Assembly: GCA_009103225.1 (NCBI GenBank)
Contig: RHPI01001428.1
Location: 432,158-496,157, forward strand
DNA: 64,000 nt
Direction: 5' to 3'
Origin: Chlorokybus atmophyticus
Taxonomy: Eukaryota; Plantae; Mesostigma and Chlorokybus algae
Position 1 is the first letter of the stretch. Each line of letters opens with the position of its first letter. The notes under the pieces were generated by a model. It was not told the origin of the DNA, did not search any database, and saw only the letters and a program-made list of their open reading frames with translations. Below, in pieces: positions 19,831 to 26,739 of the stretch. Position numbers and translations under genes: made by a program.

Positions 19831-19905
19831 GAGAGGCCAGCGCCTTGGTTGGACTCACGGTAGACAAGCAGCACTAGGGCGAGGGGTGAGGGAAGGGGGG
19901 GGGCG

Positions 19906-20112
19906 NNNNNNNNNNNNNNNNNNNNNNNNNNNNNNNNNNNNNNNNNNNNNNNNNNNNNNNNNNNNNNNNNNNNNNNNNNNNNNNNNNNNNNNNNNNNNNN
20001 NNNNNNNNNNNNNNNNNNNNNNNNNNNNNNNNNNNNNNNNNNNNNNNNNNNNNNNNNNNNNNNNNNNNNNNNNNNNNNNNNNNNNNNNNNNNNNNNNNNN
20101 NNNNNNNNNNNN
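19906..20112. other. assembly gap (N run)
   Basis: 207 N, flanked by G runs. Confidence 0.99.
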
Positions 20113-20740
20113 GGGGGGGGGGGGGGGGGGGGGTATATGCGGCACTGTGCTTGTGCAAATGGCGCAGCTATGGTGGCCGCCACGCCTTATTCATCTTGTG
20201 CAAAATATTGCAGGGCCTGCCACGCTTTGAGATCATCATGCATAACACTCAAAGCACGTCGCAAACCCCAAAATAAATGGCAATAGGCAAGACAGGCAAG
20301 ACAAGCATGCAGTCATATGATTACATGGGGGCCAAGGCAGAGCTATGCACAGCTTACTTATATGCGGAGAAAGTGTTATATGCGATTCAGAGAACACGCA
20401 CTTGAAGTGCAACACATTTGTAAAAGAGAGCAAAGCTCATGTGCACAAACAGCTGCGACGACCTCGTTGTCGCAATGAAAGCAACATCCCGTCAGGATTA
20501 AGATATCTCTTATGATGTACAACCCAGCTCTAGTTATTGGTACTGTGCCCTGCTATCCTTGGCAAACTACCACAACCTTACCTGTCATCAAATATCACAC
20601 TGTTCCTACCAACCCAGTACAAACAACATCAACCGGGGGTTGGTTCACACCATCAGCAACAGGCACAGCTATCCGCTTGGCCTGGCAGGTTGGGCGATTC
20701 TGTAATTGGGGAGCATCTAGCATCACGACCAGGAAGCCAG

Positions 20741-23700
20741 CTAGCCAGTGTTGCGCATGTTGCTGGCGATGGCCTTGATAGATCTCAGCAGCGGCATTTC
20801 CCACTGTTGTCGCTCGGCCTCCTCTAGAGTCATGTCGCGACGCCTGCCCAGGAGGATGACCTGGATGTGGTTCAACGGGTCAAGGTAGCGGTTACGAGAG
20901 TCGAGGGACTGCTCAAGGGCAGGGTTGTCTTCGAGTAGACTGCTGAGCTGCGTAACCATCAGCAGCTGCGACTTGGTGCGGAGGTACTCCTCCTTCATGA
21001 GATCAAACACCAGCTGCTGCGTGATGCGGTCCTTGCAGAGGCGCGCATACTCGCGACAGATCTCCATGTCCGCCTTGTACAGGGACATCTGCACGTTGCT
21101 CAGGAAGTTGCGGAAGAAAGGCCAGTCGCGGTACATCTTCTGGAGCTCGAGGATGCGGTCCGGGTTGTTCTCGGTGTAGCCGAGGATGGCGCTACCCACG
21201 CCATACCACGCGGGGATAACTGCGCGACTCTGGGCCCAGCCAAAAACCCACGGGATAGCTCTCAGCGAAGACTTGTCGCGCACAGCAGCCTTTCTGCGGG
21301 CTGGACGGCTGCCGATGTTCATGAGGCCAATCTCCTCAACAACTGTTGCTTCATAGAAAAAGTCATAAAAGCCCTCTGTTTGGTCGGTAAGCTCTCGGTA
21401 CGCCTTCTCTCCAGCAGCGGCCATGTGCTTGAGAATCTCCATGTGCGCAGGGTTGTCCTCAGACAGCAACTGCGTCTGCTTCAAACTGGCCTTCAGCAGG
21501 GCAGTAACGCCTACAGTCAACTCATAGACGGCGGTCTCAGCATTGCCGTATCGGTAGGTGATGACTTCTCCCTGCTCAGTGAACTTGATGGTACCGTCCA
21601 CGCTGCCCGGGGGTTGACCCATGATGCTCTGATGCGTGGGTCCGGCGCCGCGACCAAACGTGCCGCCTCGACCATGGAAGATGCGGGGCCGCAGTCCCTC
21701 TTCTTTGCACAGTGCCATGATCACCTGCTGAGCCTGGTACAGGCTGGTGGCGCTGCTGATGATGCCGCCGTCTTTACATGAGTCTGAGTACCCAAGCATG
21801 ACCTCCTGTACATTACCCACAGCCGCAAGGTATTTGCGATATGTGCCGTTGTTCATCAACAGACGAAGGGCCCTGGGCATCGCCGCCAAGTCGGGGATGG
21901 TCTCGAAAAGTGGCGTCACATGGTATTGGGCGTAGAACGTGCCGTCCTCTCGCACACCCAGCAAGTTGCGTGCAACGAGCCAGGACAGGAACAGCACTTC
22001 CATGACATTGCTGGCCTGCTTGGTCATGGAGATGACATACGACGCAACCGCCTCTCGCCCGATAATCTCCAAGTTGTTACCGACGCTCACAAAGGTGTTG
22101 AGCACAAGCCTTGTGGACTCGCTGACGGATGCCAGGATCTGTTCCACGCGTTCGCGCGACAGAGGCGACATCTCAATCTGCTCAGCAAGCAATTCAAGGC
22201 GTTCATCATCTGACAAGTCAGCGTAATTGTCGCAGACGCCCAGCTGCTCAGAGCTCAACAACTCTGCAACAGCCTCGCTGTGTGTCGTGGACTCCTGCCT
22301 GATATCAAGCGCCATGAGATGGAAGCCGAAGGTCTCCCCGAGCCGCAGCAGATCATTGACCTTAGTGAGGGCAAGGCGATAGTTGTTATCTGCAATCAGG
22401 GATTCCCGGATGGCACGCAGGTCCCTAAGGAACTCTGAAACAGACTCGTATGCATTCTCTTTTGGGTCCAGACCGGGAATGTCATCAAGGTTGAACTCAA
22501 TGTCCACCAGAATGTCCTCCCGCGCAAAGGACTGCTGAGCCGCTATCAACTTCAGCTGGTTGTTCACAATGCGGATCATCTGCTCTAGCCGGTGTCGCAT
22601 CACGCGCAGCTTCTTGCGGTACGGCTCTGTGGCGAACAGATCCGGATCTTGTTGGAAGGCTGGGATATTCTTGATGATCTCCTCATCTCCTGACAAGCTA
22701 TCCATCAGGATGGAACTCACGGGGCTGATGAGGCTGGAGTGCGTGAGCACGTTTGTGGCTGCGCGCACGCGGCGGATGTACTCTGCAAGGATGAGACGGC
22801 TCTGTAGCAAGGCCGCAAGCTCGGTTGTTTCAGGTGTGACATACGGATTGCCGTCGCGATCTCCACCAATCCATGACCCAAACTGAATAAAGCTGGGCAC
22901 GGTGACAGGCACGCCGTTGTTCAGCGCCTTCAACTCTTCGCCATACACGCGCATGAGACTGCTATCAGCGTAGGCGTACGTTGTGCACACGGCATCGAAT
23001 AAACTGAGTCTGAAGTAGTTCAACCCCGTCTGGATCTCCTCAACAACTGTTGGCCGTCTGGACCGCATCTCATCTGTCTTCCACAGAATCTCAACCTCTC
23101 CTCTGATTGCCTCAACCACGCCCTGGCGTGCCACCTCGCTCAACCGAGGGTCTTCCCGCTTCTCGGTGAACTCAAATATGCGGTGCAGACACTGCAGTAT
23201 GACGCGACGCCTTGCTTCTGTTGGATGGGCTGTAAAGACTGGCATGTACTGCACGCCAAGGCAAGTAAGCAGACGCACCGAATGCTACCTGTGGCATATG
23301 TGTACCAATCAAGTGTGCGCTACTGATACAAATCAGTTGCATACCTCTGCTTTTCCAAACAGAGTCACAATATCTTCGGCCTTCACCCCCTTTGACTTCA
23401 TTCGGCGGTATGTGTCGTCAAAGGAAGCATACCAGAGCGGATCCGTAACATTGCTGTCGCGCACCTGTAGAGAGTTCTTGGTGTTAATCTATGCGCCTTA
23501 CAGCCAGCCAGCTGTTTGCCAACATAAATGCAAGGGTGCACTTGCAGAAAGTGTTCTCACCTGCTGCCTCCGCTTTCGATGCAAGTAGGACTCTTCAGCA
23601 ATGTTCAACAACGATGAATAGCAGTAGAACGAGCGCACCACGGCAGTGATCTGCAGATTATTAAAATAAACGTAAGGACATACAACAAACAAACCTGCAT

Positions 23701-25868
23701 GGCCAGCGGCGAAACAGTACTAGTAGTAGTACCGACAGCAACTATGACAACGTATTTACAATAATAATGATAGGCCTAATATAGCTGTCAACAATGTACA
23801 ACGTAACTAGTAATCACAGCAACACCAGCCATTATCATACTCATACCAAGACACACCACTACAACGAAGGAACTGTAATTGCCAACCAGCAACACTGAAT
23901 CCGCTGGTGTTGGTTCTACTGGCAGCGCCAACAAAGTATCTACATTGAACCACCCCCGAAACGGCAGCTGCCCCAAACCTTGTGTACATGTTGTGTTACA
24001 GTTCTCAGCACGTGGTAAAAGGTAACAGACCATGCACGCAAGCAGCACAGGCACAGTATGCGGGCACAAAGCTGGCACACATGACTGCAACTGCATGCAG
24101 GACAGCTTGACTGAGCTGTACCGTATCAACATCCATCTTCTCAATGAAGCGCAGCAGCGATGCTCGCGCTCGAGGGTCTTCCTGCTGTCGCATAGAAGCA
24201 AACCCATCCCGCAAATGCATCACCTTCGCAAGACAACGTCATCAGCCAGCCTGCTTTATGTTGACAGAAATGGTTGGAACTTCTGTTTTGCAATGTGCAA
24301 TGTGCAAAGTGGCCAACACAAAGCTCCTACAGTACCCGGCTGTGCAAAGTGGCAAACATAAGCCCACCTTGTCCAACAACCCTTCAGGTCCGTGTTCTGC
24401 AATCACGTCATCCAAGATCTGAGCCAAGAAAGCTTTCTGCGGAACGGAACCAATCAAGTTGTGAGAAGCAGCCTATACACAAAAGAAAATCATGAACTGC
24501 TAGCGTGTGAGGAATCTGCACTCGTACAAGGCTACATGTTGATATGCATTGTGAGAACCATGAACTCCAACTCCTGTGGAATGAAGCCTACAGATGCTAT
24601 CACATGGAAAACCACTTAGCACCACAAGTACCTGGTCCTCAAGCTCCTCGTCTACGTCAATCACATTGGCTGCTTGATGCGCGAGGCCAACAGAGGACCG
24701 CAACTCATCCCTTATGCGAGGCCATTCGTTCTCATCAATCTGCTTGCCCTTATCTGCGACGAGAAAGATGTCCACAACGCGGTCGCCTTCTGTCCTAATC
24801 TCTGCGTTGAGCACTCTGCCGTATGGGAAACACCAGCAGGTTAGCAAAACGACATGTCCAAAGGGAAGCACCCAGTACTCAATTCGATAGAATAACCATC
24901 TTGGGTTGGTCACCAAGCATAACCCACAGCCCATGCGTACGTGAGGTTCAAACTTGTAAAAGCTTGCGTGACATCGCGGAGAAGGTTGGCCTGGTCTGCG
25001 GCTTGTATGGTCACGACTGTTCCCTTTTTTACACTGCTGTTGTCAAACTGCACAACAAACTGTCCGGGAGCTGACACAGTGGAAGTGGTCGCTCCATCTG
25101 TCACGATCACGTCTGTGTCGTTCAACACTGCCGGCGTCCTGTCTGAAGCAACACACTGCACTGGCACCCTGCCAACCACAGTAATATTCTCACTGCAAGC
25201 CAGAGAAGCGTCATTCAGTTCACTGTCAGTAGGCTTCAAGCATCATACCTTTGGACTCGGCTCTGTTGCTGAGTGCATGGCCATCGACAACACTGCTCGA
25301 CGGTTGTGGGTTTCCCTCGCAAGCCACCCCGAATGGCGCTGGAGGCCTGACAACCAAACATTACCTGATTGACATGGATTGCCAGCTGCAGACGACTAGC
25401 AAGCAGCACACGACACAGGCATGCAGGTTTTGCACATGACACACCTGCTTTGCAGGCTTGGAGGGCCCCGCAGACACGCCTGGAGTTTGCAGGGCGAGTC
25501 TGCAGGAAACCGAGATTGGTTGCTTGCAACCAAAGCATTCTCCCTTGCTTGCAATGCAGACCAGGGGCAACCGTGCATGCAAGTTTGCTTGAAGGCGTGT
25601 CGTGTGTCTTTGGTGGCACACACAATTCTTTCACCAGGTCACTCAAGAGGCATTTTGGTTGTGCAATGCTGAATTGACAGACAACACGCAAGCAGTTGTG
25701 TGTTGTCGACCAATTGCGAATTGTCATGACTACACGACAAACTACTTGTAATTCCACAGAAGTTTTTTGTGTACAAAGGAACGTGCCAGCATAGCTACTC
25801 CCTCAACACCATGTTGGCAGCTGCAGTGGGACAACGTACCTTGAGACAGAGCAGATGGATGCAGCCAT
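20741..25868 (-). CDS. ppc: phosphoenolpyruvate carboxylase, bacterial-type core, with an N-terminal transit-peptide-like leader and an ACT domain (1180 aa)
   Basis: Ten exons, all GT-AG and phase-compatible: 25868-25840, 25499-25445, 25346-25249, 25192-24941, 24815-24632, 24472-24368, 24223-24122, 23650-23561, 23464-23345, 23248-20741 (3543 nt). An in-frame TGA lies 12 codons upstream of the ATG. Motifs: VFTAHPTE, GSWIGGDRDGNP, QEVMLGYSDSCKDGG, FHGRGGTFGRG, LRAIPWVF, C-terminal RNTG. Confidence 0.95.
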
Positions 25869-26739
25869 CCCGGAAGAACGCGTTCCCAGCTCAGTGAGCT
25901 GTCACGAGGCACTCTTAGCAAGAACGCAGGTATGTGCAGTGCCGCAGGCAACAGCCATGAATATGAAATTGAGCTTGCAGCTGTTCAACAGACATGTCAG
26001 CCGAAACTTCCAACTGACACCCTACACCGTGCTTGATGCAGTGCATTGCTCAGGACTTCAAGCGCAACGTCAGGGCGCAAGCCATTGACAACAGCAGAAT
26101 ACATGTTGCATGGTGAAACAACTCCCAGCTGGAGTGACTTAGACCCGCTGACCAGAGCATGGACAAGAAGAATCGTGCCACAAGCCGCAAGGGGCCGCCC
26201 GGCAATTACATGCAAATCTACAACTTGACCGCACCTCAGCAAGCTGACAGCACGCGCCTCAGCAGCAATACGTCCGCAGCAAGCCTCTCCGCAAGGAAGC
26301 GCGAGCTACCGCCGGCTTCGCCGCATGCCATACAGACCGCCAGCTGGCAATGTAGGCCTCCGCTGGAGCAAAGTCTGCCGCCAGACGTTTACTCTCGTCC
26401 GGATGCCGTAACTCGGTGTCGCTCTCGGCAGCGATGCCCAAGCGCGTGTTGGTGAAAGCGAATTGCATGGCGCGATCAACCTTGATGCGCTTTTCGAGTT
26501 ACAATGGAGCTACGAGTTACGTGTCAAGAGCCGGCCCAGAGCCGTAACCTCCTCGCGGCCGCTGGTGGCTCGCGGTGTTGAGAGAGGTCGTCGAGGGAAT
26601 CATGCGCGCACGGACAATTCTGCCAGCTGGCACCGGACAGAATCCTTTAAGTGGCTCATCACCTGATGAAGCTGATGCATTCATCAGCTTCATCAGGTGA
26701 TGAGGCTTTGTTTTTTTCATTCACACCAACACCTTGGCT

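What the first reader, a model, noticed from the sequence alone, without database searches (positions are those of the whole stretch)
20741..25868. ACT-domain-fused PEP carboxylase: a possible amino-acid-sensing PEPC
Seen: upstream exons splice in frame onto the PEPC core and encode VVQFDNSSVKKGTVVTIQAADQANLLRDVTQAFTSLNLTVLNAEIRTEGDRVVDIFLVADKGKQIDENEWPRIRDELRSSV (exons 25192-24941 and 24815-24632). Known: this fits the GlnD/ACR-type ACT consensus (TVxxVxAxDRPGLLxxI...AxIxTxG...DxFxV). Characterised plant, algal and bacterial PEPCs that I know have no such domain, and the plant-type SIDAQ phosphorylation site is absent here. Inference: allosteric or protein-partner control via ACT may replace PEPC-kinase control and tie anaplerotic OAA supply to N status. 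The ligand loop reads DQANLL instead of DRPGLL, so specificity may be altered.
Basis: partly seen in the sequence, partly recalled or inferred. Interest (0 to 1): 0.85.

Follow-up and report, generated by a model that had tools for sequence, protein, structure and literature searches.

The report
ACT-domain PEP carboxylase, a third green clade
This Chlorokybus gene really does make one protein that joins an amino-acid-sensor-type (ACT) domain to a bacterial-like PEP carboxylase, and the same fusion is conserved from prasinophyte algae to mosses and clubmosses as a PEPC lineage that the literature I could search does not describe.

Summary
The window is Chlorokybus atmophyticus. A spliced transcript contig matches the window without a mismatch and joins ten exons (25868-20741, minus strand, nine GT..AG introns) into one mRNA. 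Its translation is identical to the JGI model of 1160 aa.

The protein has three parts:
- Residues 1-95 are disordered and look like a transit peptide.
- Residues 98-180 form an ACT domain. [quoted passage not shown] A profile of the domain retrieves plant ACR proteins and GlnD first.
- Residues 195-1160 are a complete PEPC core. Its catalytic and aspartate-site residues are intact, and it is about 49% identical to PEPCs of sulfur-oxidising gammaproteobacteria.

The fusion is not unique. It forms one clade with members in Pterosperma, Mesostigma, Spirogloea, liverworts, mosses and Diphasiastrum, and intron positions are shared with Marchantia. Spirogloea, and by inference Marchantia and Anthoceros, also carry separate plant-type and bacterial-type PEPCs, so this is a third lineage. 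No paper found describes it.

Ligand sensing is inferred only. The loop DQANLL departs from the DRPGLL consensus at its two best-conserved positions.

The parts
20525..25999 (-). Approximate extent of the mRNA. 5' UTR of at least 131 nt, CDS 25868-20741, 3' UTR of at least about 215 nt.
   Evidence: The X1 contig is 3829 nt. Its laid pieces and record coordinates imply about 160 nt in the first exon and about 175 nt beyond 20700.
25066..25868 (-). Codons 1-95 (exons 1-3 and the start of exon 4: 25868-25840, 25499-25445, 25346-25249, 25168-...). A non-conserved N-terminal presequence that looks like a transit peptide.
   Evidence: AF2 pLDDT is about 25 over aa 1-95. The first 60 aa hold 1 acidic residue, 8 K/R and 19 S/T/A, and orthologs show the same bias. 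The region does not align between orthologs. Targeting itself was not tested.
24941..25059 (-). First half of the ACT domain (aa 98-136, in exon 4 = 25168-24941). Includes the FDN strand and the loop DQANLL at 24996-24979.
24816..24940 (-). Intron 4 (125 nt, GT..AG), which splits the ACT domain between aa 136 and 137. Marchantia paleacea has an intron at the same position.
   Evidence: Joint 24815|24941 in X1 and X2. Position mapping to P0004 179|180.
24686..24815 (-). Second half of the ACT domain (aa 137-180, in exon 5 = 24815-24632). The rest of exon 5 encodes the linker, and the exon ends in phase 0 at aa 198.
24437..24631 (-). Intron 5 (195 nt, phase 0) at the border between the ACT-linker and the PEPC homology. 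Marchantia has an intron at the same position.
   Evidence: Joint 24436|24632 in X1 and X2. The Pfam PEPcase match starts at aa 195. Mapping to P0004 242|243.
20744..24643 (-). PEPC catalytic core, aa 195-1160. It runs over the end of exon 5 and exons 6-10: 24436-24368, 24223-24122, 23650-23561, 23464-23345, 23248-20741. The last exon is 2508 nt. Stop codon TAG at 20743-20741.
   Evidence: PF00311 scores 896 bits over the full profile. Catalytic and aspartate-site residues are conserved. pLDDT is mostly above 90.

Best explanation
What is shown:
- This is a nuclear Chlorokybus atmophyticus gene for a three-part protein. [quoted passage not shown]
- The core is closest to PEPCs of sulfur-oxidising gammaproteobacteria.
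- The gene belongs to an old, vertically inherited green-lineage clade, which I call ACT-PEPC. It is distinct from plant-type PEPC. The evidence also indicates it is distinct from the AtPPC4-type bacterial-type PEPC.

What is inferred:
- The ACT domains of neighbouring subunits of the PEPC oligomer pair up, as in ACT-regulated enzymes such as phosphoglycerate dehydrogenase and Chlamydomonas alpha-amylase AMA2.
- The paired domains transmit the binding of an amino acid to the catalytic core. Glutamine is the leading candidate, by analogy with GlnD and AMA2. This would couple oxaloacetate supply to nitrogen assimilation, probably inside the plastid.
- This control is added to the retained aspartate/malate inhibitor site and does not replace it.
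For: One mRNA:
- A single spliced contig with 0 mismatches and nine GT..AG joints, confirmed in part by a second study and by a relative about 95% identical.
- The spliced CDS translates exactly to P0001.

ACT domain:
- The isolated domain passes the curated cut-offs of PF22754, PF24931 and PF01842, and 16 of 17 orthologs hit PF24931.
- The AF2 model has core pLDDT of about 80-89.
- Foldseek and VIA-align top hits are nearly all ACT domains: 9c7n Z 9.5, 9c7o Z 9.4, 6mx1 Z 8.8, 2nyi Z 8.7, and 6lxg.
- The profile hits the Rel ACT domain in the PDB at E = 5.6e-7.
- In 1.8 billion representatives the top hits are four-ACT ACR proteins and GlnD.

PEPC core:
- 896 bits to PF00311.
- Counterparts of E. 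coli H138, R396, E506, D543, R581 and R713, and of the aspartate-site residues K773, R832, N881 and R587, are all conserved.
- 35 of the 40 listed differences from the related strain fall on third codon positions.

Clade:
- 21 eukaryotic sequences form one clade with SH-aLRT 100, and its branching follows the species tree.
- Named members are Physcomitrium, Sphagnum, Ceratodon, Marchantia, Riccia, Calypogeia, Diphasiastrum, Spirogloea, Mesostigma and Pterosperma.
- At least three intron positions, and probably a fourth, are shared with Marchantia. They include the intron inside the ACT domain and the one at the domain border.

Third lineage:
- In the CDD table of PMC8784020, Spirogloea holds PTPCs, BTPCs (PRK00009) and SM000126S26288 and SM000312S11989. 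The last two are my P0012 and P0015, and the table lists them only as 'PEPcase superfamily'.
- Marchantia, Anthoceros and Physcomitrella show the same extra gene of about 1150-1190 aa.

Mechanistic precedent: the N-terminal GlnD/ACR-like ACT domain of Chlamydomonas AMA2 has the same topology and is required for glutamine activation (PMC11190351). The AMA2 residues D106, L110 and F141 have counterparts at the same spacing here.
Against: - No binding, kinetic or localisation data exist for any member.
- The beta1-alpha1 loop reads DQANLL. The R and G of the DRPGLL consensus are each present in more than 75% of 385 GlnD/ACR ACT domains and are replaced here by Q and N, found in 3.7% and 1.6%. Canonical ligand binding may therefore be altered or lost in Chlorokybus and bryophytes.
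- The best structural matches over the whole domain are plant bHLH ACT-like domains, which serve as dimerisation modules.
- I could not examine the full-length model's coordinates, so ACT-core contacts and oligomer geometry are unknown.
- The relation to BTPC rests on co-occurrence and similarity ranking, not on a joint tree.
Confidence: 0.6

Rival explanations
1. The domain has the ACT fold but binds no ligand. It acts as a dimerisation or partner-binding module that sets the oligomeric state of the PEPC or docks another protein. The plant bHLH ACT-like domains work this way.
For: The top Pfam hit for the Chlorokybus domain is PF22754, the bHLH ACT-like family (30.2 bits). The best whole-domain structural matches are the GL3 and maize R ACT-like domains (Z 9.5 and 9.4). 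The R and G of the loop are lost in Chlorokybus, Spirogloea and bryophytes.
Against: The profile's strongest sequence relatives are ACR and GlnD domains. Prasinophyte members and Mesostigma keep N/D-R/K-x-G-L-L. The derived DQxNLL loop is itself conserved from Chlorokybus to mosses, which points to constraint on that loop. An ACT domain of the same topology mediates glutamine activation in AMA2.
Confidence: 0.27
2. The protein is simply the algal and bryophyte ortholog of the known bacterial-type PEPC (AtPPC4 type). Seed plants lost the ACT domain, so there is no third lineage.
For: It shares the RNTG C-terminus, the lack of an N-terminal phosphorylation motif and the general 'proteobacterial-like' character with BTPC.
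Against: Spirogloea carries both this gene and separate PRK00009-type BTPCs of 1126 aa. By matching lengths, Marchantia and Anthoceros do as well. No seed-plant BTPC appears among the 120 best hits, although such proteins fall inside the length window. Gammaproteobacterial PEPCs score about 810-830 bits, against about 360 bits for plant and E. coli PEPCs in the PDB.
Confidence: 0.08
3. The fusion is an artefact: two neighbouring genes merged by gene prediction, or a chimeric assembly.
For: Nothing beyond the prior that long N-terminal extensions in automatic gene models are often wrong.
Against: Spliced contigs from two independent studies cross the ACT-internal and the ACT-PEPC junctions. The same architecture and shared intron positions occur in more than 15 species, including chromosome-scale assemblies.
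Confidence: 0.02

Closest known systems
Gammaproteobacterial PEPC (Thiohalobacter, Sulfurivermis, Thiomicrorhabdus, Ectothiorhodospira type, about 930-940 aa)
   Same: The core is about 49% identical over its full length, scoring 806-827 bits for the listed bacterial hits. It has the same catalytic and aspartate-site residues and the same RNTG end.
   Different: The bacterial enzymes have no ACT domain, no presequence and no introns. With E. coli as outgroup, the eukaryotic clade is sister to the sampled bacteria, not nested within them.
Plant bacterial-type PEPC (BTPC, AtPPC4/RcPPC4) and plant-type PEPC (PTPC)
   Same: Same enzyme family (PF00311). Like BTPC, it ends in RNTG and lacks the N-terminal Ser phosphorylation motif.
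   Different: It has an N-terminal ACT domain and presequence. It co-occurs with separate PTPC and BTPC genes in Spirogloea and, by inference, in Marchantia and Anthoceros. It scores only about 366 bits against solved plant-type PEPCs. It was not found in seed plants. The literature read states that plants have two PEPC clades (PMC8566536, PMC5854131).
Chlamydomonas alpha-amylase AMA2, and starch phosphorylase STA4, with an N-terminal ACT domain
   Same: [quoted passage not shown] In AMA2 the domain is needed for glutamine activation, and modelling suggests it forms the dimer interface (PMC11190351).
   Different: The catalytic domain is different. I did not make a direct sequence comparison with AMA2. 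No biochemistry exists for ACT-PEPC.
GlnD (PII uridylyltransferase) and plant ACR proteins such as ACR11
   Same: These are the closest sequence relatives of the ACT domain. The shared signature is xDN...T-V/I...D-x-x-x-L-L...A-x-I-x-T...D-x-F. According to the papers read, GlnD's ACT domains are required for its response to glutamine, and ACR11 acts on plastid GS2 and Fd-GOGAT.
   Different: Here there is one ACT domain per chain, not two to four. The loop is DQANLL, not DRPGLL.
E. coli D-3-phosphoglycerate dehydrogenase (SerA)
   Same: A tetrameric enzyme with one ACT domain per subunit. By established knowledge, the ACT domains pair across subunits and bind the effector at their interface. 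It is among the structural matches of the model.
   Different: [quoted passage not shown] The analogy concerns mechanism only.

Membership tests
Phosphoenolpyruvate carboxylase (Pfam PF00311, EC 4.1.1.31) | Full-length match to the PEPcase profile | tested here: met
   896 bits, profile positions 1-919 of 919, aa 195-1160.
Phosphoenolpyruvate carboxylase (Pfam PF00311, EC 4.1.1.31) | Catalytic His and Arg residues, metal ligands, the Gly-rich loop and the C-terminal NTG | tested here: met
   Counterparts of E. coli H138, R396, E506, D543, R581 and R713 are present, as are the loop FHGRGGTFGRGAGP and the end RNTG. The residue list is recalled from the E. coli structure papers.
Phosphoenolpyruvate carboxylase (Pfam PF00311, EC 4.1.1.31) | PEP carboxylation activity | not testable with these tools
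   Needs an enzyme assay.
ACT domain (Pfam ACT clan) | Profile match at or above the curated cut-off | tested here: met
   For the isolated domain P0001:88-200, PF22754 scores 30.2 against a cut-off of 27.6, PF24931 scores 28.7 against 27, and PF01842 scores 27.2 against 27. Sixteen of 17 orthologs hit PF24931. In the full-length protein the scores fall just below the cut-offs.
ACT domain (Pfam ACT clan) | Four-stranded antiparallel sheet with two helices on one face | tested here: met
   [quoted passage not shown] It matches solved ACT domains at Z 7-9.5 and Foldseek probability 1.0. This rests on a predicted structure, not a solved one.
ACT domain (Pfam ACT clan) | Binds a small-molecule effector | not testable with these tools
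   Needs binding assays.
GlnD/ACR-type ACT subgroup | The nearest sequence relatives are GlnD and ACR ACT domains | tested here: met
   The top hits of the profile search are four-ACT proteins and proteins with GlnD_UR_UTase, HD and ACT domains. A GlnD is the only non-self hit of the region search.
GlnD/ACR-type ACT subgroup | The loop D-R-P-G-L-L between strand 1 and helix 1 | tested here: not met
   Chlorokybus has D-Q-A-N-L-L. D, L and L are kept, and R and G are replaced. Mesostigma (DKPGLL) and the prasinophyte group (NR-x-GLL) do meet the feature.
Plant-type PEPC (PTPC) | An N-terminal phosphorylation motif of the SIDAQ type and a QNTG C-terminus | tested here: not met
   No SIDAQ, IDAQ or QNTG is present, and the C-terminus is RNTG. 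The score against solved PTPCs is only about 366 bits.
Plant bacterial-type PEPC (BTPC, AtPPC4 type) | Orthology with AtPPC4 (monophyly with BTPC; specific CDD hit PRK00009) | tested here: inconclusive
   Orthologs P0012 and P0015 are listed as 'PEPcase superfamily', not PRK00009, and they co-occur with PRK00009-type genes in the same genome. No BTPC is among the best 120 hits. I could not build a joint tree because no BTPC sequence was obtainable with these tools.

The most novel reading that the evidence does not exclude
ACT-PEPC is a third, plastid-targeted PEPC lineage of the green plants. It would have been built before chlorophytes and streptophytes diverged, by joining a gammaproteobacterial-type PEPC to a GlnD/ACR-type sensor domain. 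It would be gated directly by glutamine or another nitrogen-status amino acid, and it would have been lost in the lineage leading to seed plants. If so, early plants had a hard-wired link between carbon and nitrogen metabolism that PEPC research has not seen.
Probability: 0.3. Interest if true: 0.78.

Novelty: new variant of a known kind. Interest (0 to 1): 0.62.

Why it matters
PEPC supplies the carbon skeletons for nitrogen assimilation, and its control has been studied intensively. The plant literature I read recognises only two lineages, plant-type and bacterial-type. It knows regulation by phosphorylation, ubiquitination, metabolite effectors and hetero-oligomers, but no dedicated sensor domain.

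A conserved PEPC with its own ACT domain is present in the tractable models Marchantia and Physcomitrium. That gives a directly testable route to learn how early green plants matched oxaloacetate supply to nitrogen status. It also raises the question of why seed plants dispensed with it.

It corrects PEPC family surveys as well. At least one survey detected these genes and set them aside as unclassified 'PEPcase superfamily' hits.

Tried and rejected
- Scanning the two ACT half-exons separately against Pfam gave only weak hints (E 0.05-0.1). The joined protein was needed.
- A word-based search with the N-terminal region found only the protein itself and two GlnDs, because the region is too divergent for shared words.
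- A search seeded with the Pterosperma-cluster protein found no named core chlorophyte such as Chlamydomonas, Micromonas or Ostreococcus. The method is not sensitive enough to call them absent.
- The protein-atlas search on aa 88-400 returned nothing usable.
- I could not obtain a BTPC or PTPC sequence as a usable reference, so there is no joint PTPC/BTPC/ACT-PEPC tree. The tree I built holds only this clade, its bacterial neighbours and E. coli. It was a quick search under LG+G4, and the tool warned that long branches meet: the E. coli outgroup, and P0014 with P0019.
- Model coordinates are not exposed, so I could not measure how the ACT domain docks on the core or model the tetramer.
- The supplements of the Marchantia plastid-proteome preprint are not held, so I found no proteomic evidence on localisation.
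- Gene-model artefact was considered and rejected.
- 'ACT replaced the PEPC-kinase site' was rejected as a framing, because the core belongs to a separate proteobacterial-like lineage that is not expected to carry that plant-type motif.
Full report
**What is there**

The region lies on the minus strand of a eukaryotic, intron-bearing genome. The 845-aa open frame at 20741-23278 is a PEPC (PF00311). Its best database hit is the JGI model Chlat1/4695 of Chlorokybus atmophyticus (P0001, 1160 aa), so the window is Chlorokybus.

**Transcript evidence**

Four public runs hold the stretch. When laid on window 20700-25900, one contig of run X1 (3829 nt, no mismatch) covers every exon and skips nine segments, all with GT..AG ends.

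- A second study (X2) independently shows the joints 24436|24632, 24815|24941 and 23248|23345.
- X3 is a relative about 95% identical, presumably another Chlorokybus strain or species. It has the same exon structure.
- After resolving the ambiguous cut positions, the exons are 25868-25840, 25499-25445, 25346-25249, 25168-24941, 24815-24632, 24436-24368, 24223-24122, 23650-23561, 23464-23345 and 23248-20741.
- Their translation is identical to P0001.
The protein therefore has 1160 residues, not 1180.
- The quoted peptide is residues 99-179.

The ACT exons and the PEPC core are on one mRNA. A contig that lacks all nine canonical introns can only derive from spliced RNA, although the run's record does not state that it is RNA.

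**Domain anatomy**

- Residues 1-95 are predicted disordered (pLDDT about 25) and do not align between orthologs. They are rich in Ser, Thr, Ala and basic residues, with one acidic residue in the first 60. The same bias is seen in Ceratodon, Mesostigma and others. This fits an organellar transit peptide, probably plastidial. No targeting predictor or proteome was available, so this is an inference.
- Residues 98-180 are an ACT domain. In the full-length protein five ACT-clan Pfam families hit the same stretch just under their cut-offs. When the domain is scanned alone, PF22754, PF24931 and PF01842 pass their curated cut-offs, and 16 of 17 orthologous segments hit PF24931. In Mesostigma PF01842 reaches 37.6 bits.
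[quoted passage not shown] The full-length model reproduces it.
- Foldseek against the PDB returns almost only ACT domains, at probability 1.0 and E about 1e-3. An independent all-against-representatives structural search gives the GL3 and maize R ACT-like domains (Z 9.5 and 9.4, covering 77-79 of about 80 residues). Aspartokinase, 2nyi, SerB, PGDH, Rel and phenylalanine hydroxylase ACT domains follow at Z 7-8.8.
- At sequence level the A1 profile hits the Rel ACT domain in the PDB (E 5.6e-7).
- In 1.8 billion representative proteins the profile gives 3276 hits below 1e-10. The top ones are 400-620-aa proteins with four matched stretches and 850-930-aa proteins with two C-terminal stretches. 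Pfam identifies these as ACR-type ACT-repeat proteins and GlnD uridylyltransferases.

**The loop**

I aligned 385 ACT domains from the 149 best ACR/GlnD hits to the profile. The loop between strand 1 and helix 1 reads D (78%) or N (15%), then R (76%), P (40%), G (78%), L (80%) and L (74%).

Chlorokybus has D-Q-A-N-L-L. Q occurs at the R position in 3.7% of these domains and N at the G position in 1.6%.

- Bryophytes and Spirogloea share DQ-x-N-LL. Diphasiastrum has DQEGLL.
- Mesostigma has DKPGLL.
- The prasinophyte group has NR-x-GLL.

The departure is real, lineage-wide and itself conserved. It may mean changed specificity, or loss of canonical ligand binding.

**The PEPC core**

Aligned with E. 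coli Ppc (taken from NC_000913), the residues I recall as catalytic are all conserved in Chlorokybus and eight orthologs. These are H138, R396, E506, D543, R581 and R713. So are the residues recalled as forming the aspartate inhibitor site: K773, R832, N881 and R587.

- The core is 31% identical to E. coli Ppc.
- It is about 49% identical to the 930-940-aa PEPCs of Thiohalobacter, Sulfurivermis, Thiomicrorhabdus and Ectothiorhodospira.
- Against solved structures it scores about the same for plant PTPCs (366 bits) and for E. coli (357 bits).
- There is no SIDAQ-type motif, and the C-terminus is RNTG.
- Between the window and the related strain X3, 35 of the 40 listed core differences fall on third codon positions. 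This indicates purifying selection.

**Distribution and age**

Proteins of 1100-1215 aa with the same architecture occur in the following taxa:

- Mesostigma viride
- Spirogloea muscicola (two copies)
- Marchantia paleacea, Riccia and Calypogeia
- Ceratodon (two copies), Physcomitrium patens (XP_024391121) and several Sphagnum species
- the lycophyte Diphasiastrum
- the prasinophyte Pterosperma
- several marine transcriptomes and metatranscriptomes

In a maximum-likelihood tree of 56 sequences rooted on E. coli, all of them form one clade (SH-aLRT 100), and its internal order follows the species tree.

In Marchantia paleacea the gene spans 20 kb with many more introns. The Chlorokybus intron positions 136|137 (inside the ACT domain), 198|199 (the ACT-linker/PEPC border, phase 0) and 221|222 coincide with Marchantia exon ends. 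The position 285|286 probably does too.

The fusion therefore predates the split of Chlorokybus from the land-plant line. Given Pterosperma, it probably predates the chlorophyte-streptophyte split. No fern or seed-plant protein appears among the best hits.

**Relation to known plant PEPCs**

The papers I read state that plants have two PEPC clades, plant-type and bacterial-type (PMC8566536; PMC5854131).

The supplementary CDD table of PMC8784020 lists three groups for Spirogloea: PTPCs, PRK00009-type BTPCs of 1126 aa, and separately SM000126S26288 and SM000312S11989. Those two are exactly my P0012 and P0015, and they appear only as 'PEPcase superfamily'.

The same pattern holds elsewhere:

- Marchantia polymorpha has PTQ45560 (PTPC), PTQ41595 (BTPC) and PTQ42341, whose hit ends at 1191.
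- Anthoceros has AANG007402.
- Physcomitrella has Pp3c12_10250, whose hit ends at 1179.

That study kept only the first two classes for its tree. The genes have thus been seen but not recognised.

Searches for ACT together with PEPC, for these gene identifiers, and for related wordings found no description of the architecture. I could not put BTPC into my own tree, so 'third lineage' rests on co-occurrence and similarity ranking.

**How it probably works**

Shown: one polypeptide with an intact PEPC core and a GlnD/ACR-type ACT fold in front of it, conserved over several hundred million years.

Inferred: the ACT domains pair between subunits of the PEPC oligomer and pass an amino-acid signal to the core. 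The best precedent is Chlamydomonas alpha-amylase AMA2. It has an N-terminal ACT domain of the same unusual topology, similar to GlnD and ACR11, and that domain is required for activation by glutamine (PMC11190351). The three conserved AMA2 residues tested there (D106, L110, F141) have counterparts at the same spacing in the Chlorokybus domain.

Glutamine is therefore the leading candidate ligand, but the atypical loop weakens the case. The main rival is a ligand-free dimerisation or docking role, as in the bHLH ACT-like domains that are the best structural matches.

**Verdict**

The feature is an undescribed but widespread variant of a known enzyme, with good model organisms available for testing.

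Noticed in passing
window 19900-20130: A run of N (an assembly gap, seen as X in all frames) lies about 600 nt beyond the stop codon of the PEPC gene. It is flanked by C-rich sequence that reads as proline runs.
   Followed up: no
window 20736-25345 (run X3): A contig from a second Chlorokybus-like organism is about 95% identical and has the same nine-intron structure. Most of the listed core differences are at third codon positions. This fits the several cryptic Chlorokybus species described in recent years (from memory).
   Followed up: partly
window 20741-23248 compared with L002:3001-23279: In Chlorokybus all introns sit in the first 28% of the coding sequence, and the last exon is 2508 nt. 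The Marchantia ortholog has introns throughout, with at least 18 exon pieces over 20 kb. Either Chlorokybus lost the 3' introns or land plants gained them.
   Followed up: partly
L003:942-3845 (TARA Oceans metagenome scaffold): P0297/P0019 is an intronless relative of 967-1042 aa from marine metagenomes, on a scaffold with 69% GC. It groups inside the ACT-PEPC clade next to a 1215-aa MMETSP protein, yet no ACT-coding sequence is detectable in the 900 nt upstream. It could be a picoeukaryote gene with an uncalled upstream exon, or a true ACT-less member. The tree tool flagged its placement as a long-branch join.
   Followed up: partly
alignment A1 (P0001 aa 119-124 and orthologs): In the tree Mesostigma, with the canonical loop DKPGLL, is sister to Chlorokybus, with DQANLL. 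Spirogloea and bryophytes share the DQ-x-N-LL state with Chlorokybus. The derived loop therefore arose twice, or Mesostigma reverted.
   Followed up: no
P0012 (Spirogloea SM000126S26288), about aa 160-190: The public gene model carries a 28-residue insertion in the middle of the ACT domain, at the position of the conserved intron. It looks like an unspliced intron in the annotation. The paralog model P0015 instead lacks about 50 residues there.
   Followed up: no
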